A stretch of 64,000 nucleotides of DNA from Isurus oxyrinchus (GCA_026770705.1 JANJGN010000071.1:1302001-1366000); one strand, 5' to 3'; shown: positions 19,064 through 61,141, counted from the stretch's first letter. Numbers and translations: made by a program. The notes: generated from the sequence alone by a model not told the origin.

Positions 19064-19203
19064 ACAGTGGAGGAGAGATTCTGCACGTGATCCTGATCCT
19101 GGGAATACGAGCTGTGATATTCCTTGTGGCTGTGGTTATCACTATCGCTGGAGTCTGTGTCTGGGAGAGACAAACAGTGAAAGGAAGTCGACAGACTGTT
19201 TGA
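19064..19203 (+). CDS. Terminal TM exon with intramembrane Arg and short tail (activating type, gene B)
   Basis: gttctctAG acceptor, phase 1; (D)SGGEILHVILILGIRAVIFLVAVVITIAGVCVWERQTVKGSRQTV*. Arg codon 19108-19110, TGA 19201-19203. Confidence 0.85.
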
Positions 19204-19309
19204 AGCTTTGTACAGCAACAATCTGGTCAGTCAGTGTGGACAAATAACGTGTGATGTTGGGTTAAGTTGTAAAGAAACTGGTCAGTGTCCTGGTTAGAAT
19301 CACCTTCGT

Positions 19310-19930
19310 ATCAGAGAGGCATTCCAGCACAGTAGGAGTCCATTCAGCCCATTGAGTCCATGCTGTCTCTGTGTAGAGCAATCCACTCAGTCCCATTTCC
19401 CCCTCTCTATCCCCGTATCTCTGCAAGTTTATTTCCCCTCAAGTGTCCAACCAATTTCTGTTTGATATCGTTCATCGTCTCCACTTCCACCATCCTCGTA
19501 GGCAGCGAGTTCCAGCTCATTACCACTCGCTGTGTAAAAAAGTTCCTCCTCACATCCCCCCTCTGCCCAAAACCTTCAATCTGTGTCCCCCAGTCCTTGT
19601 ACCATCAGCTAATGGCAACAGCTTCTCTTTGTCTACCTTATCTAAACCCATCATCATCTTGTACACCTCGATCAGATCCCGCCTCAATCTCCTTTGCTCC
19701 AAGGAGAACAACCCCAGCTTCTCCAACCCAACCTTGTAGCTAAAATCCCTCATCCCTGGACCCATTCTGCTCAATCTCCTCCCCACCCTCTCAAGGACCC
19801 TCACTTCCTTCCCAAAGTGAGGAGACCAGAACTGGACACAATACTCTAGTTGTGACCTAACCAGAGCTTTATAAATGTTCAGCATAACCTCCCTGTGTTT
19901 GTACTCAATCCCTCGATTTATGAAAAGCTT
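19310..19930 (-). mobile_element. CR1 LINE 3' fragment
   Basis: ORF 19550-20017: YKALVRSQLEYCVQFWSPH...LGLFSLEQRRLRRDLIEVYKMM. Confidence 0.9.
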
Positions 19931-20281
19931 ATTCTTTCCATCAGCACAAACAGCAATTTCCAAGCGGACTCCCATCAGCAGACAGAGTGCAATGAAACAT
20001 CGGCATGCCTGCTTCATAATGTACGGAGAGAATCCTGGAACGAGAGATTCTCCTTCTTCTCCTCAGCAAGCTGAAACTTTTCCTTATACCTGGTGCTCCC
20101 CAGTCCTGCTGTGTGGACACATCATAACCACGGCATTGTCTGGCTGTGTGCAGCCAACATGGTCGAATAGGAATGAACAGAAATGTGACGTTGCTAAACT
20201 CTGTTCTCTGATTGGAATGTGCTTTCTGAATGCTGCACCTTTTTCATGCTGCGATAGATTGTAAGAAGCATTTGGGTTATG

Positions 20282-20287
20282 AATAAA
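20282..20287 (+). terminator. Candidate polyadenylation signal for gene B
   Basis: AATAAA at the end of a 3'UTR block homologous to the 3'UTR of the ITIM gene (43700-43883); mirrored at 60613-60618. Confidence 0.5.
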
Positions 20288-21239
20288 ATTACATTGATTA
20301 ACACAAGTGATTAAAATGCTCAGCCTGTTCTGTAGCTATTTATAGATTAAAATTCTTATTTTGCTGCCAAATTCTTGGCTCAAAGACATTACTTCATGTT
20401 GTCACGTTTTCCAATCAGATGAATTCCTGTGCCCATCTTTATAATAGAAATTTCCAAAGTAAACATGTCACATTGCAGCTGCACACACTCCTGCCAGTGG
20501 GTGGTGCGATATGAAGGCTGCCTTGCTGCTCAGAAACAGCGAGAAATATTCCTGTTTTTGCATGAACTTCATGTGTGCATGAAACACAGGCATCAGAAGC
20601 AATTTTGTACAATTTGTACAATGTTCTTTAGACAGCGCAGCACTCCCTCTGTTCAAACCCTCCAACAGTGCAGCACTCCCTCAGTTCAAACCCTCCGACA
20701 TTGCAGCTCTACCTCAGTTCAAACCCTCCGACAGTGCAGCACTCCCTCAGTTCAAACCCTCCGACAGTGCAGCACTCCCTCAGTTCAGACGCTCTGACAG
20801 TGCAGCACTCCCTCAGTACTGATCCTCCGACAGTGCTGCACTACCTCACTAATTAGCGACTGGAAGGTTTATGTTCATTTATCTTTATTTTCCATTCCTA
20901 TTGAGCTATGGAGCTCCTGATTTGTCACCTTTCTGTACCTCGTCCAATGCTTCTGTTATCAGGACTTCCACATCGATGTGAAAGAGCCATGATGATAGCA
21001 GACAGTCGCACAATGGGAATGGCACTAGGCCAGTGATCCAGAGGCCCAGGTGAATGCTTTGGAGGTAAGGGTTCAAATCCCACCACGGCAGCTGGAGGAA
21101 TTTAGATTCGATTAATCAATAAATTTAATTGATTGATACATTTTTTTCTTATTCATTTCAGGGATGTTGGTGTCGCTGACTAGGCCAGTATTTGTTGCCC
21201 ATCCCCAATTGCCTTTGAGAACATATGGATATCTGAGTT

Positions 21240-22170
21240 AGGATCAGGAGTAGGTCACTCAGCCCCTCGAACCTGCTCCGCCATTCAGTAAGATCATGGC
21301 TGATCTGATTGTCACCTCAACCTCACATTCCTGTCTACCCCCAATGACCTTTCACCCCCTTGTTAATCAAGAATCTATCTAGCTCTGCCTTAAAAATATT
21401 CAAAGACCCTGTTTCCACTGCCTTTTGAGGCAGAGTGTTCCAAAGACTTACTACCCTCTGAGAGAAAAGATTTCGCCTCATCTCTATCTTAAATGAGCGA
21501 CCCCTTATTTTTAAAAAATGACCCCCTAGTTCTAGATTCTCACACAAGAGGGAACATCCTCTCCATATCCACCCTGTCAAGACTCCCCTGGATCTTAAAG
21601 GTTTTAATTAAGTCGCCTCTTACTCTTCTAAACTCCAGTGGATACAAGCCTAACCTGTCCAACCTGACCTCATAAGACAAACCACCCATTCCTGGTATTA
21701 GTCTAGTAAACCTTCTCTGAACTGCTTCTAATGCATTTACATCTTTCTTTAAGTAAGGTGACCTTACTGTACAGAGTACTCCAGATGTGGTCTCACCAGT
21801 GCCCTGTACAACTGAACATAACCTCCCTACTTTTCTATTCAATTCCCCACACAGTAAATTATAACATCCCATTAGCTTTCCTCATGACCTGCTGTATCTG
21901 CAAACCAGCCTTTTGTGATTCATGCACGAGGACACCCAGATCCCTCTGCATCTCAGAGCTCTACCATCTCTCACCTTTTAGATAATAATCTTCCTTCTTG
22001 TTCTTTCTGACAAAATGAACACTTTCACATGCGCCCACATTATTCTCCATTTGTCAGATCTTTGCCCACTCACTTAACCTATCGATGTCACTTTCTAACC
22101 ACCTTACATCCTCTTCACAATTTACTTTCCAACCTATCTTTGTGTCAGCAGCTCATTTCGCCGCCATTCC
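21240..22170 (-). mobile_element. CR1 LINE 3' fragment
   Basis: ALEAVQRRFTRLIPGMGGLSYEVRLDRLGLYPLEFRRVRGDLIKTFKI; mostly absent from the inverted copy. Confidence 0.88.
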
Positions 22171-22649
22171 TGGGCAGTCCAGGTGCTTCTCCACCGAGGT
22201 TCAAATGAGCACAGTTTATATATTTTTACTCTCAGTTACAAGGTAATGGTATTAGTTAGACAAAGGCCACAGCACAATGACCCTCCGGTGGGCTGATAAT
22301 TGTGTGCTTGTACAGTAATTACAGGGCAGAAACTGGCTATTGTCCTTTTGAGACAGCAAAGAATCTATGTTTGTTCAATACAAAAGGTTTCCGGAGGCTG
22401 ACTGGATGTGGTTCAAGGCCATCGGACGGTGTGAAATAACCTTCCCCATTTCTTGATTGAGTCACCCTGTGTCCTTGTGTGTGTGTCTCCCATTTCCTCA
22501 TTGCAAATTTACAGCTGAACCCTTTGTACAGGTTTTTAGCTTTCACGTAAGGATGTGATTGTCTGTGTACGCTTTGTCACCCTAGCTGCTGGTCCTGGCT
22601 GGCTCTTTAAAATAAATCCAAATTTTCTGCACCTTCAATGAGATTCTCT

Positions 22650-23720
22650 CTTGTTGAAGCTGGTCATTGCCTGGCACTTGTGTGGCATGAATGTTACTTA
22701 TCACCTGTCAGCCCAAGCCTGGATGTTGTCCAGGTCTTGCTGCATTTGGACATAACTTGCTTCAGTATCTGAGGAGCCGTGAATGGTGCTGAACATTGTG
22801 CAAACATCAGCAAACATCCCCACTTCTGACCTTATGATGGAAGGAAGGACATTGATGAAGCAGCTGAAGATGGTTGAGCCTAGGACACTACCCTGAGTAA
22901 CTCCTGCAGTGATGTCCTGGAACTGAGATGATTGACCCCCAATAATCACAACCATTTTCCTTTGTGCTGGGTCTGACTCCAAGCAGCAGAGAGTTTTCCC
23001 CCGATTCCCATTGACTCCAGTTTTGCTCGGGCTCCTTGATTTGCCACACTCAGTCAAATGCTGCCTTGATGTCAAGGACAGTCACTCTCACCTCACCTCT
23101 GGAGTTCAGCTCATTTGTGCATGTTTGAACCAAGGCTGTAATGAGGCCAGGAGCTGAATGATCCTGGTGGAACACAAACTGAGCGTCAGTGAGCAGGTTC
23201 TTGGTAAGCAGGTGCTGCTTGCAAGCGCTGTTGATGACCCCTTCCATCACTTTAGTAATGATCAAGAATAGACTGCTGGGGAATTGGCTGGGTTGGATTT
23301 GTCCTGCTTTTTGTGTACAGGACGTAACCCATAGACAGGTAGTTGCCAGTGTTGCAGCTGTACTAGAAAATTCCAGAAAGCTTGGCTAGGGGCGCAGCAA
23401 GTTCTGGAGCACAAGTCTTCAGTACTATTGCCGGAATAATGTCAGGGCCTGGAGCATTTGCAATATCCAGTGCCTTCAGCCCTTCCTTGATATCACATGG
23501 AATTAATCGAATTGGCTAAAGATTGGCATCTGTGATGCTGGGGACCTCCGGAGGAGGCCGAGATGGATCACCCACTCAGCACTTCTGGCTGAAGGTTGTT
23601 GCGCATGCTTCAGTCTTGTCTTTTGCACTGGCGGGCTGGGCTCCTCCATCATTGAGGATGGGGATATTTGTGGAGACTCCTCCTCCAGTGAGTTGTTTAA
23701 TTGTCCACGACTGGATGTGA
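22650..23720 (-). mobile_element. CR1-type LINE reverse-transcriptase fragment
   Basis: GVTQGSVLG...FINVLP...MFADV (RT core) and LDIKAAFD; frameshifted. Confidence 0.88.
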
Positions 23721-25559
23721 CATCTGGAATGCGAAGCTAGTCTCAGTAATGGTGACCATGAAACTAAGGCCAATTGTTGCAAAAACCCATCTGGGTCACT
23801 AATGCCCTTTGGGGAAGGAAACCTGCCGTCCTTACCCATTCTGGCCTACGTGTGACTCCTGACCCACAGCAATGTGGTTGACTCTTAACTGGCCCCTGAA
23901 ATGGCCGAGCAAGCTACTGAGTTATATCAAAACCCGCCACAGACCAGTCAAACCAGGCGAACTGCAGCACTTCGAAAAGGCAGCTCAGCACCCCCTTCTC
24001 AAGGGGTCAGTCAGGAACAGGTAACAAACGCTGTCCACATCCCGTGAAACAATTTTGGTAAAAAGGTAGCCCTGTATCACCACCCACGGCCAGCGCCAAC
24101 CCCCCCAACCCTACCTGATTGCACCAGTTTCAGATTACACCAGGTCAATGAACGGATAGAAACCCAAACCAATGAGATGAGCACAGAGAAGGATCAAGCC
24201 AGAGAGAGTTGGTGGGAAGAATTGGGAAAGCAACAAAAAAGGCAGAGCGGACACTAACACTATAACAAAGTAAAGACCAGAGGAGGAAGGAAGCAAGTGT
24301 GAAGAGGAATTGAGAGCAGAGCTGGTAGGCTGCTTGTCAAAGCCAAGGACCCTCCATAGGGCACATCCACAGTGCTGTTGGGGAGGGTGATACATGATTT
24401 TGACCCAGGATCATCAAGTTTTGCACTGGCAGAGCCTTTAAAGAAAAGGGACCTTCACTACCCGTGTCCCCCGCCCAACAAAGCTGTTGACATGCCGAGT
24501 CCACCTGTGCAGGCAACCTCCAGACAGTTGACTACAAAGGCCATTGCAGCTGCTGAATATGACTTCCAGTTTCAAAACCTTCATGAATACAAGGATGGGG
24601 GATTCAGCAGGAATATTCCTGCACATCCTGTGGCAGATCCTGTAAATAAAAGGGACCTTCACTCACTCCTCAAAGCTGCTGACCTGCTGATTCACATCTA
24701 CAGGCAACCTCCAAACAGTCGACTAGAGAAGACAATGCAGCTGCTGAATGTGACTCCTAGTTTCAAACCCTTCACTCTGGAAAGAAGGAATCCAGAGCAA
24801 TGGGCCTCACTATAATACTTGACAGAAACTGATTTTAACTCTCATCTCTAAGTATTATTTTTCCTTTGCTTACATTTTAATCCTTGCACCTGATGGCTTT
24901 ATTGCTTCAACTTAAATAACTTTCAGCAGGAGCCAGGTTCAAATTGAATGGACAAGCAGGCTTGGGAGGCCAAAAGGCCTACTCCTGCTTCTGTTTATTT
25001 ATGTTTGTGTTGTTATGTAGTGGAACTAGAGAGGTTATAGCAGTTATGAGAGCATTAAGCAAACAGCAGCAAGAATTGAATACCTACGTTGTGGTTTATG
25101 AAAAGGTTTTCAACCTGGTCAACTGGTAAAATCTGTTGAAAGTGGGCTATCATGGCGTGTGCCCTTTGTGAGATATTTGTAACAACGTTCTCGATGTCGG
25201 AACAGCTTGCATTGAACAAAGCTGATCTTTACCCAGAACTTCAGAGGAAGGGGGGACAATTGTTCCCTGGTGTGGGGAGCATGGTGGGGGGGGGAGGGTG
25301 GGGGAGAGACAAGTAGCCTGAAATACCAAGCCAGACACTTTGGGAAGACAAAAGTTGTTTATTCATTTTTTTTTACAAATCATCATCTTTACAATTAAAG
25401 TCCCGACAAGATAATGGTGAATCATGAACACATTGTCGGGGTGAATCTGTGCCCGGGAGCAGAAAGCAGCAAAATCAGCAGCCCGCTTTACATCTCTCTG
25501 AATTTTAACTATCATTAACCCCAGTAACATCCATTCAAATGACTTAGTCATAAGATTCC

Positions 25560-25800
25560 TCACACATTCACTTGCACACTCACACACCCACACCCACACA
25601 GACACACTGACACACTCACTCATTCACATTGACACACACTGACACAGTCACACACACCCACACAGACACACTGACACACTCACTCATTCACATTGACACA
25701 CACTGACAGTCACACACACCCACACAGACACACTGACACACTCACTCATTCACATTGACACACACATATTGACAGTCACACACACACACACACACACACA
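25560..25800. repeat. CA-rich compound microsatellite/minisatellite
   Basis: Directly visible; mirrored at ~53820-54125. Confidence 0.9.
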
Positions 25801-26132
25801 CGCTCATAAAGACAGACACAAACACAGTCACGTGAGGTGAATAGTGTCGATGTATTTAAGGGGAAGCTGGATAAACACACGAGGGAGAAATGAATAGAAG
25901 GATATGGTGATGGGGTGAGATGGAGAAGGGATGGGCGGAGACTCGTGTGGAGCAGAAACACCAGCATGGAACAGATGGGCCGAATGGCTTCTTTCCCTGC
26001 TGTAAAACGCAGGTAAAGTTTCAGTTGGAATTAATGAACAGGGCCTGTGTGAAATAGATTGCTAAGCAGTAGATAAGGAGGGGAGAGGCTGTGGCATGGT
26101 GCAGGATGACCTTGCGTGAATGAGGCCAGGGT

Positions 26133-26249
26133 CTAAAATCTACAGCAGAGACCACAAGTCTCATTTGGTTCTCTCCAATTACAGCAGTGACAGCAGAATC
26201 TGCAGCGCCGCTGTCTGCTCATTCTGTTCTGGCGCTGCAGCAAGGAGCC
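26133..26249 (-). CDS. hamp: Hepcidin exon 3 (end of pro region plus 8-Cys mature peptide)
   Basis: gcgtttccAG acceptor, phase 0; GSLLQRQNRMSRQRRCRFCCHCCNWREPNETCGLCCRF* has the C-x2-CC-x-CC-xn-C-G-x-CC hepcidin signature. Confidence 0.93.
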   Translation of the reverse strand, partial: GSLLQRQNRMSRQRRCRFCCHCCNWREPNETCGLCCRF

Positions 26250-28517
26250 CTGGAAACGCAGGAGGACAATAGGTGAGAACATTCCGGAAAGAAAGAAGGC
26301 ATCATTTCAATCAGGCGCGTCATTGGAAGGAGGATGGCGCAATTCTATAGCGCCTTTCCCCTCCTCAGGATGGCCCAAAGTGTTCCACAGCTGAAGGAAG
26401 GACTTTTTCTGAAGTGAGCTCACCGCTGTAATGTAGGAAACGCAGCAGGCAATTCACGCACAGCAAGATCCCACAAACAGAAATGTGATAATGGCCCCGA
26501 TTTTCAGTTTTTTACCAATGTCAGTTGAGGGATAAATGTTTGCCCCAGGAAAGCGGACATAACTGCATCCCATCCACCCCCCACCACCCCCTCCACACAT
26601 ACCCCCAACTCCTGACGCACTTCATTTAAATTGTGGCCATGGAATCCTCTACATCCATCTGAGAGGGCAGATGTTGTCTCAGTTTAACATCTCATCTGAA
26701 AGACAGCGCCTTCAACAGTGCAGCACCCCCTCAGTACTGACCGTCTGACAATGCAGCACCCCCTCAGTACTGACCCTCCAACAGTGCAGCACTCCCTCAG
26801 TACTGACCGTTTGACAATGCAGCACCCCCTCAGTACTGACCCTCCGACTGTGCAGTCCCCCGCCGGTACTGACCCTCTGACAGTGCAGCACTCCAAGACT
26901 GACCGTCTGACAATGCAGCACCCCCTCAGTACTGACCCTCCGACTGTCCTGCCCCCCCGCCGGTACTGACCCTCCGACAGCTCGGTAATTTCTCAATTAT
27001 GCCTGGTGGTCCTTTTAACTCAGAGCTGAGAGTTGCAGAGAATCGAGCACACATCCTGAACTGACACTTGCAGTGCAAGTACTGGGAGCGCGCTGGTCAT
27101 TATCATGCTGCTGTCTGTGGGATCTTACTGTGCGCCAATGGCTGATTCTTTTCCCACAGTACATCAGTGACCTCACATGAAAGAAAAAAAGCACTTGATT
27201 GTCTGCGAAACACTTTGGGACGTCCTGATGTGTTGGAAGGCGCTAGAGAAATGCAAGTCCTCTTTGTCTTTCACTCGATCCTCTAAGGTGTCTGTTGATT
27301 AACCAGCCTCTCGGTGTATGATGTAGGCCTGGTTATAAACAGTTAGAAGGATCAAATATCAAAAATGCTTTGGCTGACAGTCAAACCGATTGTGCATTCG
27401 GAGAGATTAGATATGGTCTGCACACAATGACTCCAGTCTCTGGCACTGACTGCCGCCTGGGGTCTCCCTTCCACATAACACTCACAACTTGCATTTACAC
27501 AGCGCCTCTGACTTTGCAAAATGTCCCAGCCCACATTACCGGAGCGTAAATCAGAGAGAAGTCTAACACTGAGTCACATATGGAGATATTAGGGTTAGGT
27601 GACCAAAAGCTTGGTCAAAGATGTCAGGTTTAAGGAGCGTCTTAAAGGAGAGAGAGAGAGAGAGGCAGAGAGGTTAAGGGAGGGTATTCCGGAGCTCAGG
27701 GCCCCAGGCAGCTGAAGGCACGGCCACCAATGGTGGAGCGATGGGAATCAGGGGGACCCGGGAGATGCAGTAATGTCAGAGATTTTGGAGGAACATCGGG
27801 ACCGGAGGAGGTGTTCTCCTGCTCCATATCTCTCTCTCTCTTCCTCTCATCCACTCCTCCTCTCCCTGTCTCTCTCTCTCCTACTCTTCCTCTCAATTGC
27901 CCTCTCTCCCAATCTTTCACTCCTCTCTCCCTTTTCCTGTCTCTCTCCCTCTCTCTCCCCTGTCTCCTTCTCCCACTCTGTATCTCTCCCTCTCTCTCAC
28001 AGTATTTTTGTACCTTTCGCTCACTCTGTAACTCTCCCTTTCCTGTTAATTTCTCTCTCTTGGACAATCTCTCTTCCCTTTTCACTTTCCCTCACTCCGC
28101 ATCTCTTCTTTAATTTCTCCCTCTGTCACTCTCTCCCACCTATGTTCTTTCCCTTTCACCCCTCCCCGTCCCACTCTCTGTCTCTCTCTTCCAATCCCTC
28201 CCTCCCCCATTCCATCCCTCTCTCCGACTCTCGACTCCCAGCCTCTCTTTAACCCACTCCCAGGCTGGATCAGTCTCCCTCTCACTATTCCCGGCGTGGG
28301 TTACATTTAAAATTCCTGTGGGGATATGTTCACTTCCTTGGAATTGCCTCTTCCCAGCTTTGCAAAAAAAGTGGGGGCGGGGGGGGCTCGATTTCAAACA
28401 TGCCTCCTGAGTATAACCGAGACAGACTGCCACTGAAATCAGCTTGAAATCAGAAAACTTTCTGTGGAAGAAACGAGCAGGGAGAAACCTTAAAATAAGG
28501 AATGAATTTCCACCTAC

Positions 28518-28574
28518 CGTGTCCGGGGAATCCACAGATTTCTCAATCGTCGAAGAACCTAAAGCAGTGTCAAC
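28518..28574 (-). CDS. hamp: Hepcidin exon 2 (pro region)
   Basis: ctttttgcAG acceptor and GTAGGT donor; 57 nt, phase 0-0; VDTALGSSTIEKSVDSPDT. Confidence 0.82.
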
Positions 28575-35816: not shown

Positions 35817-38800
35817 NNNNNNNNNNNNNNNNNNNNNNNNNNNNNNNNNNNNNNNNNNNNNNNNNNNNNNNNNNNNNNNNNNNNNNNNNNNNNNNNNNNN
35901 NNNNNNNNNNNNNNNNNNNNNNNNNNNNNNNNNNNNNNNNNNNNNNNNNNNNNNNNNNNNNNNNNNNNNNNNNNNNNNNNNNNNNNNNNNNNNNNNNNNN
36001 NNNNNNNCACTCTTTTGCACAAACACTCTTTCACGCACACACATGCACACACACACGCACACAAACGCACAAACTCACTCACACACAAACCCTCACACAC
36101 ACACAGACACAAACATTAGCACACACACACACACACTCACACATGCACACATACTCTCAAACACACACTGTTTTGCACAAACACTTTCTCTTTCACACAC
36201 ACACATACACACACACTCTCTCTCTCACACACATGTTCTCTCTCACTCCCTGTCTCAAACACACAATCTCCCCCTCCCTCAAACACTCACACCATCTCTT
36301 TCTCGCACACTCCCTCTCTCAAACACACACACCCTCTTTCTCAAACACACACACACACATGATCTCACACACACACTCTCACATACACAAACACTCTCTC
36401 ACAGACACACACTCTGTTTTGCACACACACTATCTCACACGCACATTCTCTCTATCTTTCTCTCTCACACATAAATTCTCTCTCACTCTCACAGACGTTC
36501 TCTTTCTCTCACACACACTCTCTCTCTCTCACACACAAGCTACCTCCCTCTCTCATGCACACACACTCTACCTCTCTTTTGCTCTCTCACACATACACAC
36601 TCTCAGTCTCTCACACATACATTGTCTCTCTCTCTCACATAAACGCACTCTCTCTCTCTGAGATGGAAGGTTGGGATTTTGAGACCGTCTCAAGGTTTCA
36701 GCTTAAAATGCGGACGGACTCTTCCCAGTGAGGGAGTGCTGCACTGTTGGAGGGTCAGTACTGAGGGAGTGCTGCACTGTCAGAGGGTCAGTACTGAGAG
36801 AGTGCTGCACTGTTGGAGGGTTAGCACTGAGGGAGTGCTGCACTTCCAGAGGGTCGGTACTGAGGGAGAGCTGCACTCCCAGAGGGTCAGTGCTGAGGGA
36901 GTGCTGCACTCCCAGAGGGTCAATACTGAAGGAGTGCTGCACTCTCAAAGGGTCAATGCTGAGGGAGTGCTGCACTGTCAGAGGGTGGGCACTGAGGGAA
37001 TGCTGCTCTGTCAGACCTGCCATATTTCAGATGACATTTGAAATTAGCAACATGCCTCATGTATAATTATATATCATCAGCTCAAAATAAATAGATTATT
37101 CCTGTACGTTTCACTTTACTGTAAATTGTTTGCAGTTTCATTTCCTTAGAAACCAGGCTTGTGTGATCACTATTTTTAAATAACGTTAATAATAAAGATG
37201 CAACAATCCACACGCACACATGTACACACACACACACATTCACTCACAAGGGTACATAGACAGACACACACTCACNNNNNNNNNNNNNNNNNNNNNNNNN
37301 NNNNNNNNNNNNNNNNNNNNNNNNNNNNNNNNNNNNNNNNNNNNNNNNNNNNNNNNNNNNNNNNNNNNNNNNNNNNNNNNNNNNNNNNNNNNNNNNNNNN
37401 NNNNNNNNNNNNNNNGTTAGAGTCCAATAAAAATTTAAAAGAATATATGATTAATACAATTGCTTGTCTTTGAGGTGCAGATTGTTGACGTTTGCAGCTG
37501 TTCAAGGTTAATTGGTTTCCTGTGGCATCCTGGTGGTGATTTGATTCAGATTTGCACTTTGTTGAAGATGCGCTGTTAGCTTCAGAAAGAGAGAGAGAGA
37601 GAGAGAGAATTTCTGCTCTTTTCCAGCAGTGTTTTTGAGTGACTGCCATCTTTCTTTTTCCTCCTACTTTCTCTTATATCTGCTTGACAGAACCTGTTGT
37701 TAAACTCCTGTCTGTATATTCCCAAAGGGAATTCGATCAGCATGTCTTGCATTCATTGTCGCAGACCAAGTAATCCCTTTTTTGATCTTTGCATCTCTGA
37801 AACATTTGATGCATTTCAAGATATAAATCAACAGGAGATGGAGTCATTTCATCCTCCACAAGGGGTTTTGAATGACTGATGAATATCTGCATGGTGAGCA
37901 GTTCCCATTAGCTTGATAGACCTACAGTGATCAGAGTCCAGCGCTTTGCATTTTTAATGGAGCCCCTGTTTCAAGTGGACCCTGACACACCTCAGTGAGA
38001 ACTTTCATGCAACATGTCTGTAGTGCAATTCATTTGAAGCTTTCCAGAGAAGTGATCAAGTTTGCAGTATCAGCAATCAGGTGACTCGTGACAGCCATTT
38101 TTGATCAATGCCTAATCTTGTACTTTTGAAAAACAGGTCTCCTTTAAACAGTTCAATACGTTTTTGGCTCGTTGGTTAAGTTGAAGGAAGCTCTGTTATG
38201 ACATAACAGATGGTAAATGCTGAGCTGTTCAAATCCTGGAGGGAAACTTGAAACAACTGTCACAACTAATTTCCAACTTGTATGTTTTGAGATGTGGGCT
38301 TTGAATTCAGTAGTAATGAGATTAAGATGTTTAAGAGGTAATTATGGTTGGTTGACAAAAAGGGTTTAAAATATATTTTCCCCCAAATGCAATTTCCAAA
38401 GCAAGTCTCTTTGATTGTTAAGAATGAACCAATTAAACCACGTATGGTGGAGTCAAAGAAAGAGTAAGTTTATTAGTTACCTAACTGGAGGAAAAATAAT
38501 NNNNNNNNNNNNNNNNNNNNNNNNNNNNNNNNNNNNNNNNNNNNNNNNNNNNNNNNNNNNNNNNNNNNNNNNNNNNNNNNNNNNNNNNNNNNNNNNNNNN
38601 NNNNNNNNNNNNNNNNNNNNNNNNNNNNNNNNNNNNNNNNNNNNNNNGACAGACAAATGCGCANNNNNNNNNNNNNNNNNNNNNNNNNNNNNNNNNNNNN
38701 NNNNNNNNNNNNNNNNNNNNNNNNNNNNNNNNNNNNNNNNNNNNNNNNNNNNNNNNNNNNNNNNNNNNNNNNNNNNNNNNNNNNNNNNNNNNNNNNNNNN

Positions 38801-39974
38801 NNNNNNNNNNNNNNNNNNNNNATAATTATAGAGTCCAAGAAAAAATTAAAAGAGTCGTTTGCTTGTACTACAGCGTAGGCTGTGAAGTTTGAAGCTGTTT
38901 TAAATTAGTTGGTTTTCTGTAGATTCCTGTATTTTATCTGGCTCAGACTTGCACATTGTTGAAGACATTCTGTTAGCTTCAGACAGAGAGAGAAAGAGGG
39001 AGAAATCATTTCTGCTCTTTTCCAGCAGTGTTTGTGGAAGACTGCCATATTTCTTTTTCCCCTCCTTTCTCTTATATCTGCTTGGCAGAACCATTTGTTA
39101 AACTCCTGTCTGTATATCCCTGAAGTCAATTCGATCAGCATGTTTTGCATTCATTGTTATAGACCAAGTATTCCCATTTTTTTATCTTTGCATCTCTGAA
39201 ACCTTTGATGCATTTCAAGATATAAATCAACAGGAGACGGGGGTATTGTATCCTCCACAGGGGGTTTTGAATGGTTGATGATTATCCGCTTGGTGAGCAG
39301 TTCCCAATGTTTTGATAGAACTACAGCTGATCAAAGTCCAGCACTTTACATTTTAATGCCTTCCTTTTAAGAGTGTCTCTATTTGAAGTGGACCCTGACA
39401 CACCCCAGGCGTGAACTTCCATGCAACAGGTCTGCAGTGCAATTCATTTGAACCTTTCCAGAGAAGTGATCAACTTCACAGTATCAGCAATCAGGTGACT
39501 TGTGTCAGCCATTTTTGATCTGTGTACAATCTTGTATTTCTTTGAAAAACAGGTCGCTTTTAGACAGTTCAATATGTCTTTGGTCTCTTAGTTAAGTTGT
39601 AGGAAGCTCTTAATCGCAGTTTGTTGTCATTGGGATATTGCCTTTGTGTGTGTGTTTGTGTGTGTGAGTGAGTGTGTGAGTGAATGTGTGTGTGTGAGTG
39701 AATGTGTGTGTGTGTGTGAATGTGTGTGTTTGTGTCTGTCTGNNNNNNNNNNNNNNNNNNNNNNNNNNNNNNNNNNNNNNNNNNNNNNNNNNNNNNNNNN
39801 NNNNNNNNNNNNNNNNNNNNNNNNNNNNNNNNNNNNNNNNNNNNNNNNNNNNNNNNNNNNNNNNNNNNNNNNNNNNNNNNNNNNNNNNNNNNNNNNNNNN
39901 NNNNNNNNNNNNNNNNNNNNNNNNNNNNNNNNNNNNNNNNNNNNNNNNNNNNNNNNNNNNNNNNNNNNNNNNNN
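35817..39974. other. Assembly-gap region (N runs 35817-36007, 37276-37415, 38501-38647, 38664-38821, 39743-39974)
   Basis: N characters in the sequence. Confidence 1.
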
Positions 39975-43883: not shown

Positions 43884-44132
43884 TCAGTTTTTCTGGAACC
43901 TGATCTGTGCGTATTCCGTGTCCTCGCTCCTGTGCACAGTCCTGTCACCGCCGGGCAGCTTTGAAAAGTTGATGTTGGCGTAGAAAAGCTCGTCGGGTTT
44001 GTCGGGGTTTCCATGTCCAACATCGCCTCCCACTGGACCTTCAGAGAGACCCCGGGGAGCTGGGGTCTCCCCCTCACTAGTTGTGTCTCTGGTTGTGTTC
44101 TGGGGCTCAGTAATCAGCACGTTCTGTTTGCC
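43884..44132 (-). CDS. Terminal cytoplasmic exon with ITIM and ITSM-like motifs (inhibitory Siglec, gene C)
   Basis: ctctgtAG acceptor, phase 0; GKQNVLITEPQ...PDELFYANINFSKLPGGDRTVHRSEDTEYAQIRFQKN*. LFYANI is an ITIM and TEYAQI is TxYxxI, as in CD33-related Siglec tails. Confidence 0.9.
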   Translation of the reverse strand, partial: GKQNVLITEPQNTTRDTTSEGETPAPRGLSEGPVGGDVGHGNPDKPDELFYANINFSKLPGGDRTVHRSEDTEYAQIRFQKN

Positions 44133-45180: not shown

Positions 45181-45262
45181 CTGGTGCTTCACAGAGAGTG
45201 GACTGGGGGTCAATACAATGTCACTGGTCCCTGAAACTCTCTCCTCCATCGCTGTCTTTCTC
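45181..45262 (-). CDS. Juxtamembrane cytoplasmic exon (gene C)
   Basis: 82 nt, phase 2-0; RKTAMEERVSGTSDIVLTPSPLSVKHQ; links the TM and ITIM exons exactly in frame. Confidence 0.82.
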
Positions 45263-46323: not shown

Positions 46324-46420
46324 TTTCTCACACAGATGAAGATGAAGATTCCAGCCAGGAAAACACTCAACATGATCCCAGCCGTGAACAATCCTACTGT
46401 CCATTTACTGGAGTCTCTAC
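46324..46420 (-). CDS. Uncharged transmembrane exon (gene C)
   Basis: tttttacAG acceptor and GTAAGT donor; 97 nt, phase 1-2; RDSSKWTVGLFTAGIMLSVFLAGIFIFICVRK. Confidence 0.88.
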
Positions 46421-47235: not shown

Positions 47236-47517
47236 GTTCCACAGTGATGGTTATGAACCCCTCCACTGCTCCATGTTCATTCTCTGCCACACACTGATAG
47301 TCTCCAGTGTCCCTGGATGTAACGTGAGGAATCACCAACCACAGCTCATTGTTGGAACTTGTTCTGTTCATTGGGACATTAAGATGTCGCCACGTCAGGT
47401 TAGAAGCTGGGAAGCTCTCGACAGAGCAGATTATCACTGCAGAATTCCCCTCAATTATATTGATCGATGAAGCGTTAATCATACCAAGTGAAGTAAATGA
47501 GAGATCCTGTGGTGCAT
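47236..47517 (-). CDS. C2-set Ig exon 3 (gene C), open
   Basis: 282 nt, phase 1-1; DAPQDLSFTSLGMINASS...ICSVESFPASNLTWRH...GDYQCVAENEHG...TVE. Confidence 0.9.
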
Positions 47518-48208: not shown

Positions 48209-48241
<33 letters not shown>

Positions 48242-48300: not shown

Positions 48301-48581
48301 GTTCCACAGTGATGGTTATGAACCCCTCCACTGCTCCATGTTCATTCTCTGCCACACACTGATAGTCTCCAGTGTCCCTGGATGTAACGTGAGGAATCAT
48401 CAACCACAGCTCATTGTTGGAACTTGTTCTGTTCATTGGGACATTAAGATGTCGCCACATCAGGTTAGAAGCTGGGAAGCTCTCGACAGAGCAGATTATC
48501 ACTGCAGAATTCCCCTCAATTATATTGATCGATGAAGCGTTAATCATATCAAGAGAATTAACTAAGAGATTCTGGGTGCGT
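48301..48581 (-). pseudogene. C2-set Ig exon 2 (gene C) with a 1-bp deletion near the acceptor
   Basis: 281 nt rather than 282; the canonical acceptor gives xAC GCA CCC AGA ATC TCT TAG; the rest of the domain is open in the shifted frame. Confidence 0.8.
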
Positions 48582-49335: not shown

Positions 49336-49617
49336 ATTCCACAGTGATGGTGATGAATCCCTCCACTGCTCCATGTTCATTCTCTACCACACACTGATAG
49401 TCTCCAGTGTCCCTGGATGTAACGTGAGGAATCACCAACCACAGCTCATTGTTGGAACTTGTTCTGTTCATTGGGACATTAAGATGTCGCCACGTCAGGT
49501 TAGAAGCTGGGAAGCTCTCGACAGAGCAGATTATCACTGCAGAATTCCCCTCAATTATATTGATCGATGAAGCATTAATCATTTCAAGCGAAGTAAATGT
49601 GAGATTCTGTGGAGCAT
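49336..49617 (-). CDS. C2-set Ig exon 1 (gene C), open
   Basis: 282 nt, phase 1-1; DAPQNLTFTSLEMINASS...GDYQCVVENEHG...TVE. Confidence 0.9.
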
Positions 49618-53371: not shown

Positions 53372-53488
53372 GGCTCCTTGCTGCAGCGCCAGAAGAGAAT
53401 GGGCAGACAGCAGCTCTGCAGATTCTGCTGTAACTGCTGTAATTGGAGAGAACCAAATGAGACTTGTGGTCTCTGCTGTAGATATTAG
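53372..53488 (+). pseudogene. hamp: Orphan hepcidin exon 3 (second paralogue; exons 1-2 not present in the window)
   Basis: cttttccAG acceptor; GSLLQRQKRMGRQQLCRFCCNCCNWREPNETCGLCCRY*; open, 8 Cys, canonical RQKR site. Confidence 0.85.
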
Positions 53489-53935
53489 ACCCTGGCCTCA
53501 TTCACGCAAGGTCATCCTGCACCATGCCACAGCCTCTCCCCTCCTTATCTACTGCTTAGCAATCTATTTCACACAGGCCCTGTTCATTAATTCCAACTGA
53601 AACTTTACCTGCGTTTTACAGCAGGGAAAGAAGCCATTTGGCCCATCTGCTCCATGCTGGTGTTTCTGCTCCACACGAGTCTCCGCCCACCCCTTCTCCA
53701 TCTCACCCCATCACCATATCCTTCTATTCATTTCTCCCTCGTGTGTTTATCCAGCTTCCCCTTAAATACATCGACACTATTCACCTCACGTGACTGTGTT
53801 TGTGTCTGTCTTTATGAGCGTGTGTGTGTGACTGTCAATATGTGTGTGTTAATGTGAATGTGTGTGATTGTGTCAGCGTGTGTGTGTGTATGTGTGACTG
53901 TCAGTGCGTGTCAATGTGAATGTGTGTGATTGTGT

Positions 53936-53975
<40 letters not shown>

Positions 53976-57925: not shown

Positions 57926-59424
57926 AGAGCTAGATAGATTCTTGATTAACAATGGGGTGAAAGGTCATTGGGGGTAGGCAGGAATGTGAGGTTGAGGTGA
58001 CAATCAGATCAGCCATGATCTTACTGAATGGCGGAGCAGGTTCGAGGGGCTGAGTGACCTACTCCTGATCCTAACTCAGATATCCATATGTTCTCAAAGG
58101 CAAATGGGGATGGGCAACAAATACTGGCCTAGTCAGCGACACCAACATCCCTGAAATGAATAAGAAAAAAATGTATCAATCAATTAAATTTATTGATTAA
58201 TCGAATTGAAATTCCTCCAGCTGCCGTGGTGGGATTTGAACCCGTGCCTTCAAAGCATTCACCTGGGCCTCTGGATCACTGGCCTAGTGCCATTCCCATG
58301 GTGCGACTGTCTGCTATCATCATGGCTCTTTCACATCGATGTGGAAGTCCTGATAACAGAAGCATTGGACGAGGTACAGAAAGGTGACAAATCAGGAGCT
58401 CCATTGCTCAATATGAACGGATAATAAAGATAAATGAACATAAACCTTCCAGTCGCTAATTAGGGAGTCACTGTGGAACCCATGAGTCCCTCGCAGCGCT
58501 ATTGCAACCTTCTGGATCCCCAGTAGGGGACTCGGGGTGCAGCTGTGTCTTCCTCATCATTTGGAAAAGCCGGAATTGTTCGGGTGCCCCTTCAAACAGG
58601 CCGAAGATGCAGTGGGTGATGTCTCCCACAGGCCCTGGGAGACCTCCCCTGCCAATTTGTTTTGTAGCTTATTCTTCAACTGCGACATTGGATCAGCTTG
58701 AAAAAGGGTGGGGCTGAGGCAATGCCACCAGGTAAGCGTCTATTCCCTCACACGTCACCCCCCCCCCACCCCCGTAACCATCACAGTCCCTCCCATCGTG
58801 CTGGAGGAGCATAATGTGCACATTCCCCTCCTTCCAATCAGTCTCCTCCCTTCCTCTCTAATCCTTGATCTTATTGTGTTCGGGGTTGACATCCCAGTCC
58901 TCCTCCCTAGACTGTCTGATGTTGACATCCCAATGCCCCATGTAGACCTGACCTCTCTCCAACTAGAGGTCCATTGTACTGTGACTTACAGAGACCACCG
59001 GCCCCCCTCGATTCCCACCCCCACCCCTACCCTCTATATTACCTGCTCCCCACTGACAGGCTGCAGATGCCTCCCCTGACTGGGATTGTGCCACCTGCGG
59101 CCTAGTATCAAGCCACCCACCCCCAGGACCGACGTGTGTGAGGGACTGACCACGTCCTGCACACCATGCTGGGCACCACCAACCCAGGACTGCCAGGCTC
59201 TCCCCACCACACTGGACTGGGACTAGAATAGGCGTGCCAAGCACAGCTCTCTAAATCGTGGCGCAGACCCACAGCACTCGCAATGTTTTGTGGCCCGAAT
59301 CCTTGCTGAGGAACTGCCCAGCACTAAAAGCAAAAAAACTGCGGATGCTGGAAATCCAAAACAGAAACAGAAACAGAAATACCTGGAAAAACTCAGCAGG
59401 TCTGGCAGCATCGGCGGAGAAGAA

Positions 59425-60270
59425 CTGAGGTAGTGCAGCACTGTCGGAGGTTCAGTACTGAGGGAGTGCTGCACTGTCGGAGGGTCTGAGCTGAGGGAGT
59501 GCTGCACTGTCGGAGGCTCTGAACTGAGGGAGTGCTGCACTGTCGGAGGGTTTGAACTGAGGGAGTGCTGCACGGTCGGAGGGTCTGAGCTGAGGGAGTG
59601 CTGCACGGTCGGAGGGTCTGAACTGAGGGAATGCTGCACTTTCGGAGGGTTTGAACTGAGGGAGTGCTGCACTGTCGGAGGCTCTGAAATGAGGGAGTGC
59701 TGCACTGTCGGAGGGTTTGAACTGAGGGAGTGCTGCACTGTCGGAGGGTCTGAACTGAAGGAGTGCTGCACTGTCGGAGGGTTTGAACTGAGGGAGTGCT
59801 GCACTGTCGGAGGGTTTGAACTGAGGGAGTGCTGCACTATCGGAGGGTATGAACTGAGGGAGAGCTGCACTGTCGGAGGGTTTGAACTGAGGAAGTGCTG
59901 CACTGTCGGATGGTTTGAACTGAGGGAGTGCTGCACTGTCGGAGGGTCTGAACTGAAGGAGTGCTGCGCTGTCGGAGGGTCTGAACTGAGGGAGTGCTGC
60001 ACTGTTGGAGGGTCTGAACTGAGAGAGTGCTGCACTGTCGGAGGGTCTGAACTGAGAGAGTGCTGCACTGTCGGAGGTTCTGAACTGAGGGAGTGCTGCA
60101 CTGTCGGAGGGTCTGAAATGAGGGAGTGCTGCACTGTCGGAGGGTTTGAACTGAGGGAGTGCTGCACAGTCGGAGGGTCTGAACTGAGGGAGTGCTGCTC
60201 TGTCGGAGGGTTTGAACTGAGGGAGTGCTGCATTGTCGGAGGGTCTGATCTGAGGGAGTGCTGCACTGTC
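59425..60270. repeat. Expanded 33-bp satellite array (about 25 copies)
   Basis: (gagggagtgctgcactgtcggagggtttgaact)n; the paralogous site at 20633-20850 has only about 6 copies. Confidence 0.95.
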
Positions 60271-61001
60271 TAAAGAACATTGTACAAATTGCACAAAATT
60301 TAATCTGATGCCTGTGTCTCATGCTAACATGAAGTTCATGCACACAACAGGAATATTTCTCTCTGTTTCTCTGCAGCAAGACAGCTTTGGTATCACACCA
60401 CCCACTGGCAAGAGTGTGCAGCTACAATGTGACATGTTTACATTGGAAATTTCTATTATAAAGATGGACAGAGGAATTCATCTGATTGGAATACGTGACA
60501 ACAGGAAGCTATGTCTTTGAGCCAAGAATTTTGCAGCAAAACAAGAATTTTAATCTTTAAATATCTACAGAACAGGCTGAGCATTTTAATCACTTGAGTT
60601 AATCAATGTAATTTTATTCATAACCCAAATGCTTCTTACAATCTATCGCAGCATGAAAAAGGTGCAGCATTCAGAAAGCACATTCCAATCAGAGAACAGA
60701 GTTTAGCAACGGCACATTTCTGTTCATTCCTACTCGATGAACAATTTCAAAAGGAAATTGGACGGAAATTGGAAATAAATTTGCAGGGATACGGGGATAG
60801 AGCGGGGGATGGGACTGAGTGCATTGCTTTACAGAGAGACAGCATAGACTCAATGGGCCAAATGTCCTCCTCCATTGCTGGAATGACTCGATGATACGGA
60901 GATGATTCTAACCAGGACACTGACCAGTTTCTTTACAACTTAACACAACATCACACGTTATTTGTCCGCACTGACTGACCAGATTGTTGCTGTACAAAGC
61001 T

Positions 61002-61141
61002 TCAAACAGTCTGTCGACTTCCTTTCACTGTTTGTCTCTCCCAGACACAGACTCCAGCGATAGTGATAACCACAGCCACAAGGAATATCACAGCTCGTAT
61101 TCCCAGGATCAGGATCACGTGCAGAATCTCTCCTCCACTGT
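61002..61141 (-). CDS. Terminal TM exon with intramembrane Arg (activating type, gene D)
   Basis: Same peptide as 19064-19203: SGGEILHVILILGIRAVIFLVAVVITIAGVCVWERQTVKGSRQTV*. Confidence 0.85.

What the first reader, a model, noticed from the sequence alone, without database searches (positions are those of the whole stretch)
19064..61141. Paired activating (TM-Arg) and inhibitory (ITIM/ITSM) Siglec-type receptors in a probable cartilaginous fish
Seen: two V-C2-TM genes whose TM contains Arg (ILILGIRAVIFLV) and ends in a tyrosine-free ~12-aa tail, clustered with a module that has an uncharged TM and LFYANI/TEYAQI motifs. The C2 relics in the activating genes are nearly identical to the C2 exons of the inhibitory module. 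Established: a basic TM residue recruits DAP12/FcR-gamma in Siglec-14/15/16, and paired Siglecs (5/14, 11/16) are best known from mammals. Inference: an independent or very ancient paired-Siglec system. I cannot check whether it has been described.
Basis: partly seen in the sequence, partly recalled or inferred. Interest (0 to 1): 0.82.

Follow-up and report, generated by a model that had tools for sequence, protein, structure and literature searches.

The report
Shark Siglec cluster with activating-type copies
This shark DNA holds a cluster of sialic-acid-receptor (Siglec) genes, including two mirror-image copies of a short form with an arginine in its membrane anchor and an inhibitory tail module, so the activating/inhibitory pairing known from mammalian Siglecs also exists in sharks, where it has not been described.

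Summary
Two TM-Arg exons (19064-19203 +, 61141-61002 -) are 140/140 identical. They sit in the arms of a 12-kb inverted duplication (92-99% identity). Each follows a Siglec V exon (GSCVQIPC, YFFRIE) and a C2 exon. An ITIM/ITSM module (49617-43884, -) is also there.

RefSeq models of five other shark species carry the same ILGIRA membrane segment.

Three caveats apply:
- Copy A has an in-frame TGA in its V exon, so it is probably a null copy. Copy B's V exon runs off the window.
- The inhibitory module has no leader, V or first C2 exon of its own, and one of its three C2 exons is frameshifted. It is either an alternative 3' end of copy B or an orphan.
- Adaptor pairing and sialic acid binding are inferred only.

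The assembly gaps lie in microsatellite DNA and touch no exon.

The family sits beside hepcidin. It forms a shark clade apart from tetrapod CD33-related Siglecs. Its ectodomains group by taxon, not by tail type. It is auto-annotated in databases, but I found no paper that describes it.

The parts
10055..10094 (+). Leader exon of copy A (MIGKSYFLLSLLQ, phase-1 donor). A second leader-like exon lies at 7841-7879 in a tandem 1.3-kb unit.
   Evidence: Regex and translation. It matches the N-terminus of shark models P0148, P0158 and P0160. Splice site read.
15524..15892 (+). V-set exon of copy A. It carries GSCVQIPC, DGDCSL and YFFRIE, and an in-frame TGA at 15802-15804.
   Evidence: PDB matches: MAG 7e-10, Siglec-5 4e-8.
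16619..16915 (+). First C2-set exon of copy A (ICTFNTTCNG ... LSCRV).
   Evidence: Pfam C2-set_2 4e-9. The acceptor was placed by homology to the RNA-supported acceptor of copy B.
17229..17384 (+). C2 relic of copy A: the 3' half of a DTGDYQC-type C2 exon, with no 5' half and no acceptor.
   Evidence: 94-95% identity to the full C2 exons.
19064..19203 (+). TM-Arg terminal coding exon of copy A (DSGGEILHVILILGIRAVIFLVAVVITIAGVCVWERQTVKGSRQTV-stop).
   Evidence: It is 140/140 identical to copy B.
20142..20310 (+). 3'UTR relic with AATAAA. It is homologous to the DNA just after the stop codon of the ITIM exon (43858-43686).
63757..64000 (-). V-set exon of copy B, 3' part only because the window ends. 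YFFRIE is present and there is no stop. The C-C' loop differs from copy A.
   Evidence: The donor at 63757 is used in an RNA contig.
62732..63028 (-). First C2-set exon of copy B.
   Evidence: Pfam C2-set_2 6e-8. PDB matches to CD33, Siglec-10 and MAG. Both exon ends are defined by contig joints.
62255..62406 (-). C2 relic of copy B, with two indels.
61002..61141 (-). TM-Arg terminal coding exon of copy B.
   Evidence: The joint 62732 to 61141 with GT..AG ends is present in run X1.
49336..49617 (-). Inhibitory module, C2 exon 1, intact.
48301..48581 (-). Inhibitory module, C2 exon 2. It is one base short, so in the normal phase it reads DAPRIS-stop. It is a pseudo-exon.
47236..47517 (-). Inhibitory module, C2 exon 3, intact.
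46324..46420 (-). Inhibitory module, uncharged TM exon.
   Evidence: An RNA contig loose end matches 46418-46391 exactly, 28 of 28.
45181..45262 (-). Inhibitory module, juxtamembrane cytoplasmic exon (RKTAMEERVSG...KHQ).
43884..44132 (-). Inhibitory module, terminal coding exon with ITIM LFYANI, ITSM-like TEYAQI and the stop codon.
   Evidence: The tail is conserved in shark models P0001, P0003 and P0010.
484..3378 (+). 3' part of a third Siglec-like gene (L). It has two C2 exons (484-765, 1735-2016), both with the same in-frame TGA, and an uncharged TM exon (about 3280-3376). Tail exons follow near 4073-4165 and 5582-5695.
   Evidence: An RNA loose end matches 3282-3311 exactly.
35817..39974 (.). 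Cluster of five assembly gaps in CA/CT microsatellite DNA, near the symmetry centre of the inverted duplication. No exon is involved.

Best explanation
The window is part of a shark multigene cluster of CD33-like Siglec receptors that lies next to hepcidin.

Activating-type copies. An inverted duplication carries two copies of a short gene: leader, one visible Siglec V-set domain, one C2 domain, a membrane segment with an embedded arginine, and a 12-residue tail without signalling motifs. The arginine most likely docks the receptor to an aspartate-bearing ITAM adaptor of the DAP12 / FcR-gamma / CD3-zeta kind, so that ligand binding activates the cell. That step is inferred. Copy A is probably a null copy because of a stop codon in V.

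Inhibitory type. The cluster also encodes inhibitory-type tails, a membrane-proximal ITIM plus a distal ITSM-like motif, which would recruit SHP-type phosphatases. That is also inferred. The inhibitory module in this window is transcribed and spliced but has no head exons of its own.

Evolution. The ectodomain exons are shuffled and homogenised among cluster members, while the signalling exons are old and conserved. This is the pattern of paired immune receptors. It most likely arose within cartilaginous fishes, independently of the mammalian Siglec-5/14 and Siglec-11/16 pairs.
For: Siglec identity:
- The V exon pieces match only Siglecs at E below 1e-5. MAG scores 7e-10, followed by Siglec-5, -8, -10, -7, CD33 and sialoadhesin. 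GxCVxIPC and the E-strand Cys are aligned.
- YFFRIE aligns with the YFFRVE motif of Siglec-5; that this motif holds Siglec-5's sialic-acid-binding arginine is my own knowledge.
- The C2 exon matches CD33 domain 2, Siglec-10 and MAG. Pfam gives V-set, Ig_CD22 and C2-set_2.

Splicing:
- Run X1 has contig joints 63757->63028 and 62732->61141. Both have GT..AG ends on the minus strand. Neither appears in the three DNA-like runs.
- X1 loose ends at the relic donor read exactly into the inhibitory TM exon and into the TM exon of gene L.

Conservation:
- The first C2 exon finds 147 relatives, and every one of the top ten whose name I looked up is a shark RefSeq model.
- V-C2-TM-Arg models exist in C. 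carcharias, S. canicula and S. torazame. Long-ectodomain or partial models exist in C. punctatum and C. plagiosum. ILGIRA is invariant, and the exon is 82-96% identical to the window.
- The TM-Arg exon is 140/140 identical between copies A and B, whereas the introns are 88-96% and the V exon is 86%.

Pairing:
- In great white shark models from one scaffold, the TM-Arg form and the ITIM form share 90% of the ectodomain, against 79-80% to a third tail type.
- The C2 tree puts all these shark forms in one clade (SH-aLRT 98) that groups by taxon, not by tail type.

Synteny: hepcidin last exons lie at 26136-26303 (-) and 53318-53485 (+) and pass Pfam's threshold.
Against: - Copy A has a TGA in V. 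Copy B cannot be judged upstream of 64000.
- No adaptor, surface expression or ligand binding was tested. A 2014 survey found no FcR-gamma chain in the shark data then available (PMC4016189).
- The run that shows the splice joints is only guessed to be RNA. It also holds an unspliced contig across 61141 (record 3). Its contigs differ from the window at some places, for example 62965, so the joined transcript may come from a near-identical paralogue or from another individual.
- The inhibitory module is headless, and one of its C2 exons is frameshifted.
- The shark models used for comparison are automatic predictions.
Confidence: 0.7

Rival explanations
1. One gene with two signalling ends. Copy B and the headless inhibitory module are a single gene of about 20 kb on the minus strand. 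After the shared leader, V and first C2 exons, the transcript either ends in the TM-Arg exon (activating form) or skips it and runs on to the C2 exons, the uncharged TM exon and the ITIM/ITSM tail (inhibitory form).
For: - tblastn with full-length shark models finds no leader, V or first-C2 exon between 61002 and 49617.
- Strand and exon order fit, and all the joints are phase 1.
- The module is spliced in RNA-like contigs.
- Other sharks have models that join the same first C2 domain either to DTGDYQC-type C2 domains plus an ITIM tail (P0003, P0007, P0010) or directly to the inhibitory TM (P0001).
Against: - No joint from 62732 to 49617 or to 46420 was seen. Such a joint would leave the laid stretch and appear only as a loose end, and none stood among the listed ones.
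- A hepcidin exon on the opposite strand lies inside the supposed 11-kb intron.
- The TM-Arg unit has its own 3'UTR relic, with an AATAAA signal in copy A, so it looks like a complete gene.
- The module shows decay: C2 exon 2 is frameshifted.
- The left arm shows no such module before the gaps.
Confidence: 0.25
2. Birth-and-death debris. The features in this window are mostly decaying remnants of a fast-turnover cluster and have no function here. Copy A is dead, the module is an orphan, and the C2 exons of gene L are stopped. The functional pairs lie elsewhere in the cluster.
For: - TGA in the V exon of A.
- The same TGA in both C2 exons of gene L, and a frameshift in C2 exon 2 of the module.
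- Half-exon relics in A and B, the one in B with indels.
- Duplicated leader and tail fragments at 7.2-10.7 kb.
Against: - The TM-Arg exon and its flanks are 100% identical in A and B, while neighbouring DNA has diverged by 4-12%.
- The visible part of copy B is intact.
- RNA-like contigs use exactly these exon borders, and 28-30-nt loose ends match the window's TM exons exactly.
- The TM, cytoplasmic and ITIM exons of the module are open and conserved.
Confidence: 0.2
3. The membrane arginine has another role. The short form would be a decoy, a ligand-sequestering receptor, or a partner of some other membrane protein, and it would not signal through an ITAM adaptor.
For: - No adaptor was examined here.
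- An older survey found no FcR-gamma homologue in sharks (PMC4016189).
- The arginine sits in the outer third of the helix, not at its centre.
Against: - A single basic residue in an otherwise hydrophobic TM, followed by a short motif-free tail, is the standard mark of adaptor-dependent receptors, including Siglec-14, -15 and -16 (PMC7226832, PMC6288428).
- ILGIRA is invariant across three shark orders.
- Activating and inhibitory Ig receptor families with charged TMs are already described in a skate, the MDIRs (PMC3031540).
Confidence: 0.12
4. Assembly artefact. The two activating copies are one locus assembled twice, joined in opposite orientation across the gap cluster.
For: The symmetry centre of the inverted duplication (about 39.8 kb) falls in the gap cluster.
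Against: - The arms differ by 1-14%, by a 565-nt insertion in A at 18037-18602, by a replaced C-C' loop with a 3-nt indel, and by the stop codon.
- About 23 kb of unlike DNA separates the arms. Most of it is gap-free and unique to one side: the hepcidin 5' part on the left and the inhibitory module on the right.
Confidence: 0.04

Closest known systems
Human paired Siglecs: Siglec-5/Siglec-14 and Siglec-11/Siglec-16
   Same: - A Siglec V-set plus C2 ectodomain is combined either with an ITIM / ITIM-like tail or with a basic TM residue and a short tail.
- The ectodomains are kept alike by sequence exchange.
- Null alleles of the activating member are common (PMC6288428), as copy A may be here.
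   Different: - The mammalian pairs are young and share more than 99% of their first domains (own knowledge). The best shark pair seen, in great white models, shares 90%.
- The shark TM-Arg exon is old and conserved across shark orders. It shows no DNA similarity to the inhibitory TM exon.
- The shark family forms its own clade.
- In this window the inhibitory part has no head exons.
Siglec-15
   Same: It is a short V-C2 Siglec with a basic TM residue that signals through DAP12/DAP10, and it is conserved in fish (PMC7226832).
   Different: - Siglec-15 has Lys, not Arg.
- It is only a weak match to the shark V exon (E 0.005 to 0.02).
- It is a single conserved gene, not a member of a fast-evolving cluster with inhibitory partners.
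MAG (Siglec-4) / CD22 region next to HAMP
   Same: - MAG is the best solved-structure match to the N-terminal V piece (7e-10).
- Pfam's CD22-like first Ig domain also matches.
- Hepcidin is the direct neighbour, as HAMP is of MAG and CD22 on human 19q13.12 (own knowledge).
   Different: - The domain number and the tails are of CD33-related type (two Ig domains, ITIM plus TEY motif).
- Sharks have separate MAG-like and SMP-like genes (P0115, P0147).
Modular domain immune-type receptors (MDIR) of the clearnose skate; teleost NITR/LITR; chicken CHIR
   Same: They are multigene families of activating (charged TM) and inhibitory (ITIM) Ig receptors in non-mammals. The MDIRs show that this logic exists in cartilaginous fish (PMC3031540).
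   Different: They use other Ig folds and lineages (CD300/TREM/pIgR-like, KIR/LILR-like). They are not Siglecs and have no sialic-acid-binding arginine motif.

Membership tests
Siglec (I-type lectin) family | N-terminal V-set Ig domain followed by C2-set domain(s), type I membrane protein | tested here: met
   Pfam V-set and Ig_CD22 on the V exons, and C2-set_2 on the next exon. Leader and TM exons are present.
Siglec (I-type lectin) family | Conserved arginine on strand F (YFFRxE) that binds the sialic acid carboxylate | tested here: met
   YFFRIE is present in both copies and aligns with YFFRVE of Siglec-5.
Siglec (I-type lectin) family | Siglec cysteine pattern: B-E intrasheet pair plus an extra Cys in V (GxCVxIPC) and an extra Cys in the first C2 (CxxxxxC) for the interdomain bond | tested here: met
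   GSCVQIPC and DGDCSL align with MAG and Siglec-5. ICTFNTTCNG aligns with the CD33 domain 2 cysteines. The bonds themselves cannot be tested.
Siglec (I-type lectin) family | Binding of sialylated glycans | not testable with these tools
   Needs glycan arrays with the expressed V-C2 domains and the Arg mutant.
CD33-related Siglec subfamily | Cytoplasmic membrane-proximal ITIM plus distal ITIM-like/ITSM (TEY..) motif | tested here: met
   LFYANI and TEYAQI lie 22 residues apart in the last exon. The same layout is found in shark, amphibian and mammalian hits.
CD33-related Siglec subfamily | Orthology with the tetrapod CD33-related cluster | tested here: inconclusive
   The tree of the first C2 domain separates a shark clade from the amphibian and mammalian clades. 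It is unrooted, built on 98 columns, and lacks CD22, Siglec-1 and Siglec-15 references.
Paired activating/inhibitory receptors | Activating member: basic residue inside the TM and a short tail without signalling motifs | tested here: met
   HVILILGIRAVIFLVAVVITIAGVCVW followed by ERQTVKGSRQTV-stop.
Paired activating/inhibitory receptors | The mRNA joins the ectodomain to the charged TM exon | tested here: met
   Contig joint 62732->61141 with GT..AG ends in run X1. RefSeq models in five shark species carry the TM-Arg segment, and most of them join it directly to an Ig exon.
Paired activating/inhibitory receptors | Inhibitory counterpart with a near-identical ectodomain encoded by a separate gene | tested here: inconclusive
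   In the window the ITIM module has no V or first-C2 exon of its own. In great white models from one scaffold, the TM-Arg and ITIM forms share 90% of the ectodomain.
Paired activating/inhibitory receptors | Association of the activating member with an ITAM adaptor through the basic residue | not testable with these tools
   No adaptor sequence was examined. This needs co-precipitation and an Arg-to-Ala mutant.

The most novel reading that the evidence does not exclude
A single shark Siglec gene gives both an activating and an inhibitory receptor with the same ligand-binding head. It would do so by choosing between an early terminal exon (TM-Arg) and a distant set of exons (C2 domains, uncharged TM, ITIM/ITSM). 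In that case the pair would be made by RNA processing, not by two genes.
Probability: 0.25. Interest if true: 0.72.

Novelty: new member of a known kind. Interest (0 to 1): 0.55.

Why it matters
Reviews of fish Siglecs state that fish genomes lack CD33-related inhibitory Siglecs and regularly have only Siglec-1, CD22, MAG and Siglec-15 (PMC7226832). Paired Siglecs are discussed as a mammalian, mainly primate, feature (PMC6288428).

This work shows a clustered, expressed family in sharks with CD33-type ITIM/ITSM tails and a conserved TM-Arg partner exon. The family lies beside hepcidin, that is, in the region that holds MAG and CD22 in humans.

Two consequences follow:
- Activating "counter-receptors" to inhibitory Siglecs would have arisen at least twice.
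- The dating of this receptor logic can be tested in the oldest jawed-vertebrate lineage.

It also offers a natural case for asking whether such pairs can be made by alternative terminal exons.

Tried and rejected
- Splice acceptor. My first guess for the C2 acceptor (63019 / 16628) was wrong. The RNA joint puts it 9 nt upstream, at 63028 / 16619.
- Origin of the TM-Arg exon. I looked for DNA similarity between the TM-Arg exon and the inhibitory TM exon. The score equals that of shuffled sequence, so the TM-Arg exon is not a mutated copy of that exon.
- Second ITIM tail. No second ITIM/ITSM tail exists on the plus strand for gene L. Gene L has another tail type.
- Literature. Searches for Siglecs in sharks or chondrichthyans, and for TYROBP in sharks, gave nothing specific.
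- Earlier notes. A word search of the scan's earlier notes for adaptor genes found nothing.
- Joined model. All searches of the window were exon by exon, by reference. dN/dS and the tree were also computed per exon.
- Hairpin artefact. The idea that the inverted duplication is a hairpin assembly artefact was rejected because the arms differ.


Full report
**Layout**

The window is vertebrate genomic DNA with many Ig exons, satellites and transposon remnants. A self-comparison shows a large inverted duplication. The stretch 15646-28034 (+) pairs with 64000-51455 (-) at 92-99% identity, and 36257-37248 pairs with 51386-50326. The symmetry centre, about 39.8 kb, falls among the five N runs. About 23 kb of unlike DNA separates the arms.

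The arms differ in several ways:
- 1-14% of bases.
- A 565-nt insertion in the left arm (18037-18602).
- A replaced loop in the V exon with a 3-nt indel.
- A stop codon in the left copy.

These differences mean that the arms are true paralogues and not a hairpin artefact.

**Gaps (tested first, as asked)**

All five gaps are flanked by CA/CT microsatellite DNA or short non-coding contigs, one only 16 nt long. No exon of any gene described here touches a gap, so there is no frame to check across them. What they leave open is only whether the left arm continues into an inhibitory module of its own.

**The observation**

The string ILILGIRAVIFLV occurs at 19090-19128 (+) and at 61077-61115 (-). 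Each lies in an exon that starts after an AG (19064; 61141) and encodes DSGGEILHVILILGIRAVIFLVAVVITIAGVCVWERQTVKGSRQTV-stop.

Upstream of each TM-Arg exon lie:
- a V exon (A: 15524-15892; B: 64000-63757, cut by the window end);
- a C2 exon (A: 16619-16915; B: 63028-62732);
- a half C2 exon, the relic.

All donors and acceptors are phase 1.

LFYANI and TEYAQI lie in a terminal exon at 44132-43884 (-). Before it come a short cytoplasmic exon (45262-45181), an uncharged TM exon (46420-46324) and three DTGDYQC-type C2 exons. The relics are 94-96% identical to the 3' 158-163 nt of the full C2 exons.

- Copy A has TGA at 15802-15804 (IIDNIR-stop-EDAGPYFFRIE). Copy B has CGG there, and great white shark models have Arg, so a CGA-to-TGA change is the simplest origin.
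- The relic of copy B has two indels.
- The middle C2 exon of the inhibitory module is one base short and reads DAPRIS-stop in the normal phase. The other two C2 exons are intact.
- At the left end of the window lies the 3' part of a third gene, L. Both of its C2 exons carry the same TGA (LTW-stop-HLNV). Its TM exon is uncharged, and its tail is of another type.

**What the proteins are**

Searches of the window were made exon by exon, by reference. I built no joined spliced protein.
- The N-terminal V piece matches only Siglecs at E below 1e-5. MAG scores 7e-10 and Siglec-5 scores 4e-8, followed by Siglec-8, -10, -7, CD33 and sialoadhesin. The hallmark GxCVxIPC and the E-strand cysteine are aligned.
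- In the C-terminal V piece, YFFRIE aligns with Siglec-5 YFFRVE. That motif contains the arginine that binds sialic acid (own knowledge).
- The first C2 exon matches CD33 domain 2, Siglec-10 and MAG, including the CxxxxxC pair.
- Pfam gives V-set and the CD22-like first Ig domain, then C2-set_2, and Ig_3/I-set for the distal C2 exons.

**Relatives**

An HMMER scan of 1.84 billion representatives with the first C2 exon gave 147 hits. Every one of the top ten whose name I looked up is a RefSeq model from a shark:
- C. carcharias 'CD33-like', 92% identical, with V-C2-TM-ITIM/ITSM.
- Mustelus asterias 'Siglec-13'.
- S. torazame 'CD33-like', in which the C2 domain runs directly into VILILGIRAVIF...KGSRQTV.
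- Chiloscyllium punctatum 'Siglec-13', with a long ectodomain ending in the same TM-Arg segment.

A word search restricted to the TM-Arg part found further short forms in C. carcharias (270, 346 and 348 aa) and S. canicula (272 and 273 aa). ILGIRA is invariant in all of them, and the segment is 82-96% identical to the window.

The window is not from the great white shark, because exon identities to its models are 83-96%. More distant hits are amphibian, turtle and mammalian CD33-related Siglecs and shark MAG-like proteins. Most of the 147 hits carry the Siglec cysteine or arginine motifs, and many carry LxYAxI plus TEYxxI tails.

**Expression and splicing**

One public run, X1 (coded 'organism A'), is only guessed to be RNA. 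Its contigs show two joints:
- 63757 -> 63028, from the V donor to the C2 acceptor.
- 62732 -> 61141, from the C2 donor to the TM-Arg acceptor.

Both joints have GT..AG ends on the minus strand and sit exactly at the predicted borders. Neither joint appears in three other runs, which behave like DNA: short contigs over exons and introns alike.

Loose ends of X1 contigs at the relic's donor (62254/5) continue into sequences that match 46418-46391 and 3282-3311 exactly. These are the inhibitory TM exon and the TM exon of gene L. Distal C2 exons are therefore spliced to these TM exons in that sample.

Caveats:
- X1 also has an unspliced contig across 61141.
- Its contigs differ from the window at a few places, for example 62965, where all four runs read C.
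- The shorter side of the key joint is only 23 letters.

The transcript may therefore stem from a near-identical paralogue or from another individual. I saw no evidence for or against a joint from 62732 to the inhibitory module. Such a joint would leave the laid stretch, and only the best-supported loose ends are listed.

**Evolutionary pattern**

Between copies A and B:
- The TM-Arg exon and about 40 nt of flank on one side and 20 on the other are 100% identical.
- The introns are 88-96% identical.
- The first C2 exon has 8 differences, with dN/dS 0.77.
- The V framework has dN/dS 0.46.
- The C-C' loop is entirely different: EHIPWAPID against EWRTSSTA.

Both loop types recur in great white models with other tails: IPWAPIA in an ITIM form and GGRSSVA in a third-tail form. 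Loop variants have thus been shuffled among signalling types.

In the tree of the first C2 domain, the shark forms make one clade (SH-aLRT 98). Inside it, sequences group by taxon rather than by tail type, and the amphibian and mammalian clades stand apart. The tree is unrooted, short, and lacks CD22, Siglec-1 and Siglec-15.

In great white models from one 1.8-Mb scaffold, the TM-Arg form shares 90% of its ectodomain with the ITIM form, against 79-80% with the third tail type.

The TM-Arg exon shows no DNA similarity to the inhibitory TM exon. About 940 nt downstream of its stop codon lies a relic of the inhibitory gene's 3'UTR, with an AATAAA in copy A. The short gene thus looks like an old inhibitory-type gene that acquired a foreign TM exon.

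**Neighbourhood**

Hepcidin last exons lie at 26136-26303 (-) and 53318-53485 (+). Both are above Pfam's threshold, and both are antisense to the Siglec genes. In humans HAMP lies beside MAG and CD22 (own knowledge), so the cluster sits in what looks like the ancestral Siglec region. The right-hand hepcidin exon lies between the TM-Arg exon of copy B and the inhibitory module.

**Reading**

Best reading, about 0.7: this is a shark-lineage family of paired Siglec-type receptors.
- The short form is a real, spliced, conserved product. Its arginine probably docks an ITAM adaptor (inferred).
- The ITIM/ITSM tails probably recruit SHP-type phosphatases (inferred).
- Copy A is probably a null copy, which recalls the common null alleles of human SIGLEC14 and SIGLEC16 (PMC6288428).

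The main open point is the headless inhibitory module. It is either an alternative 3' end of copy B (about 0.25) or an orphan left by birth-and-death turnover. tblastn finds no head exons between 61002 and 49617, and the phases fit. Against the one-gene model stand the intervening hepcidin exon, the short gene's own 3' end and the decayed C2 exon.

**Novelty**

The proteins are in public databases under automatic names: CD33-like, Siglec-12, -13 and -14. I found no paper that treats Siglecs of cartilaginous fishes beyond a passing mention. The fish Siglec literature states that fish genomes lack CD33-related inhibitory Siglecs (PMC7226832). Activating/inhibitory Ig receptor families as such are known from a skate (MDIRs; PMC3031540). 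An older survey found no FcR-gamma in sharks (PMC4016189), so the adaptor question is open. I rate this a new member of a known kind, of moderate interest.

**Tools**

Noticed in passing
26136-26303 (-) and 53318-53485 (+): There are two hepcidin last exons (eight-cysteine peptide, Pfam Hepcidin above threshold), one in each arm of the inverted duplication and antisense to the Siglec genes. The arm homology ends at 28034/51455, so the 5' part of the right-hand copy may be missing.
   Followed up: partly
484-765 and 1735-2016 (+): Both distal C2 exons of the left-hand gene L carry the same in-frame TGA (ASNLTW-stop-HLNV; CGA in the intact exons). Even so, an RNA-like contig joins such a C2 exon to the TM exon of gene L.
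   Followed up: partly
7192-8488 and 9403-10711 (+): A tandem 1.3-kb unit holds a tail-exon-like piece (7317-7397, 9524-9604) and a leader exon (7841-7879, 10055-10094). It is a duplicated gene boundary, which leaves one spare leader exon.
   Followed up: partly
15670-15720 (+) against 63930-63980 (-): The C-C' loop of the V domain is completely different in the two copies (EHIPWAPID against EWRTSSTA) although the rest of the exon is alike. Both loop types recur in great white shark models with other tails.
   Followed up: partly
P0009, P0015, P0021 (sawfish Pristis pectinata for P0009; the other two not looked up), not in the window: Some relatives of this family carry an ITAM-like tail of their own (YQEL-x7-YSEL) instead of a charged TM or an ITIM.
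   Followed up: no
20400-20850, 26700-27000, 29000-30200, 36729-37015, 44580-44970, 50560-50880, 52660-52910, 59420-60270: Arrays of a 33-bp satellite (TGAGGGAGTGCTGCACTGTCAGAGGGTCAGTAC) are scattered through the locus on both strands. Short copies lie just after the first C2 exons (16940-16976, 62655-62703).
   Followed up: no
62965 (window A; all four laid runs read C): Every contig of all four public runs reads Ser (VDVSCTF, as in great white models) where both window copies read Ile (VDVICTF).
   Followed up: no
18037-18602 (+): A 565-nt insertion sits in the intron before the TM-Arg exon of copy A and is absent from copy B. It is probably a transposon.
   Followed up: no
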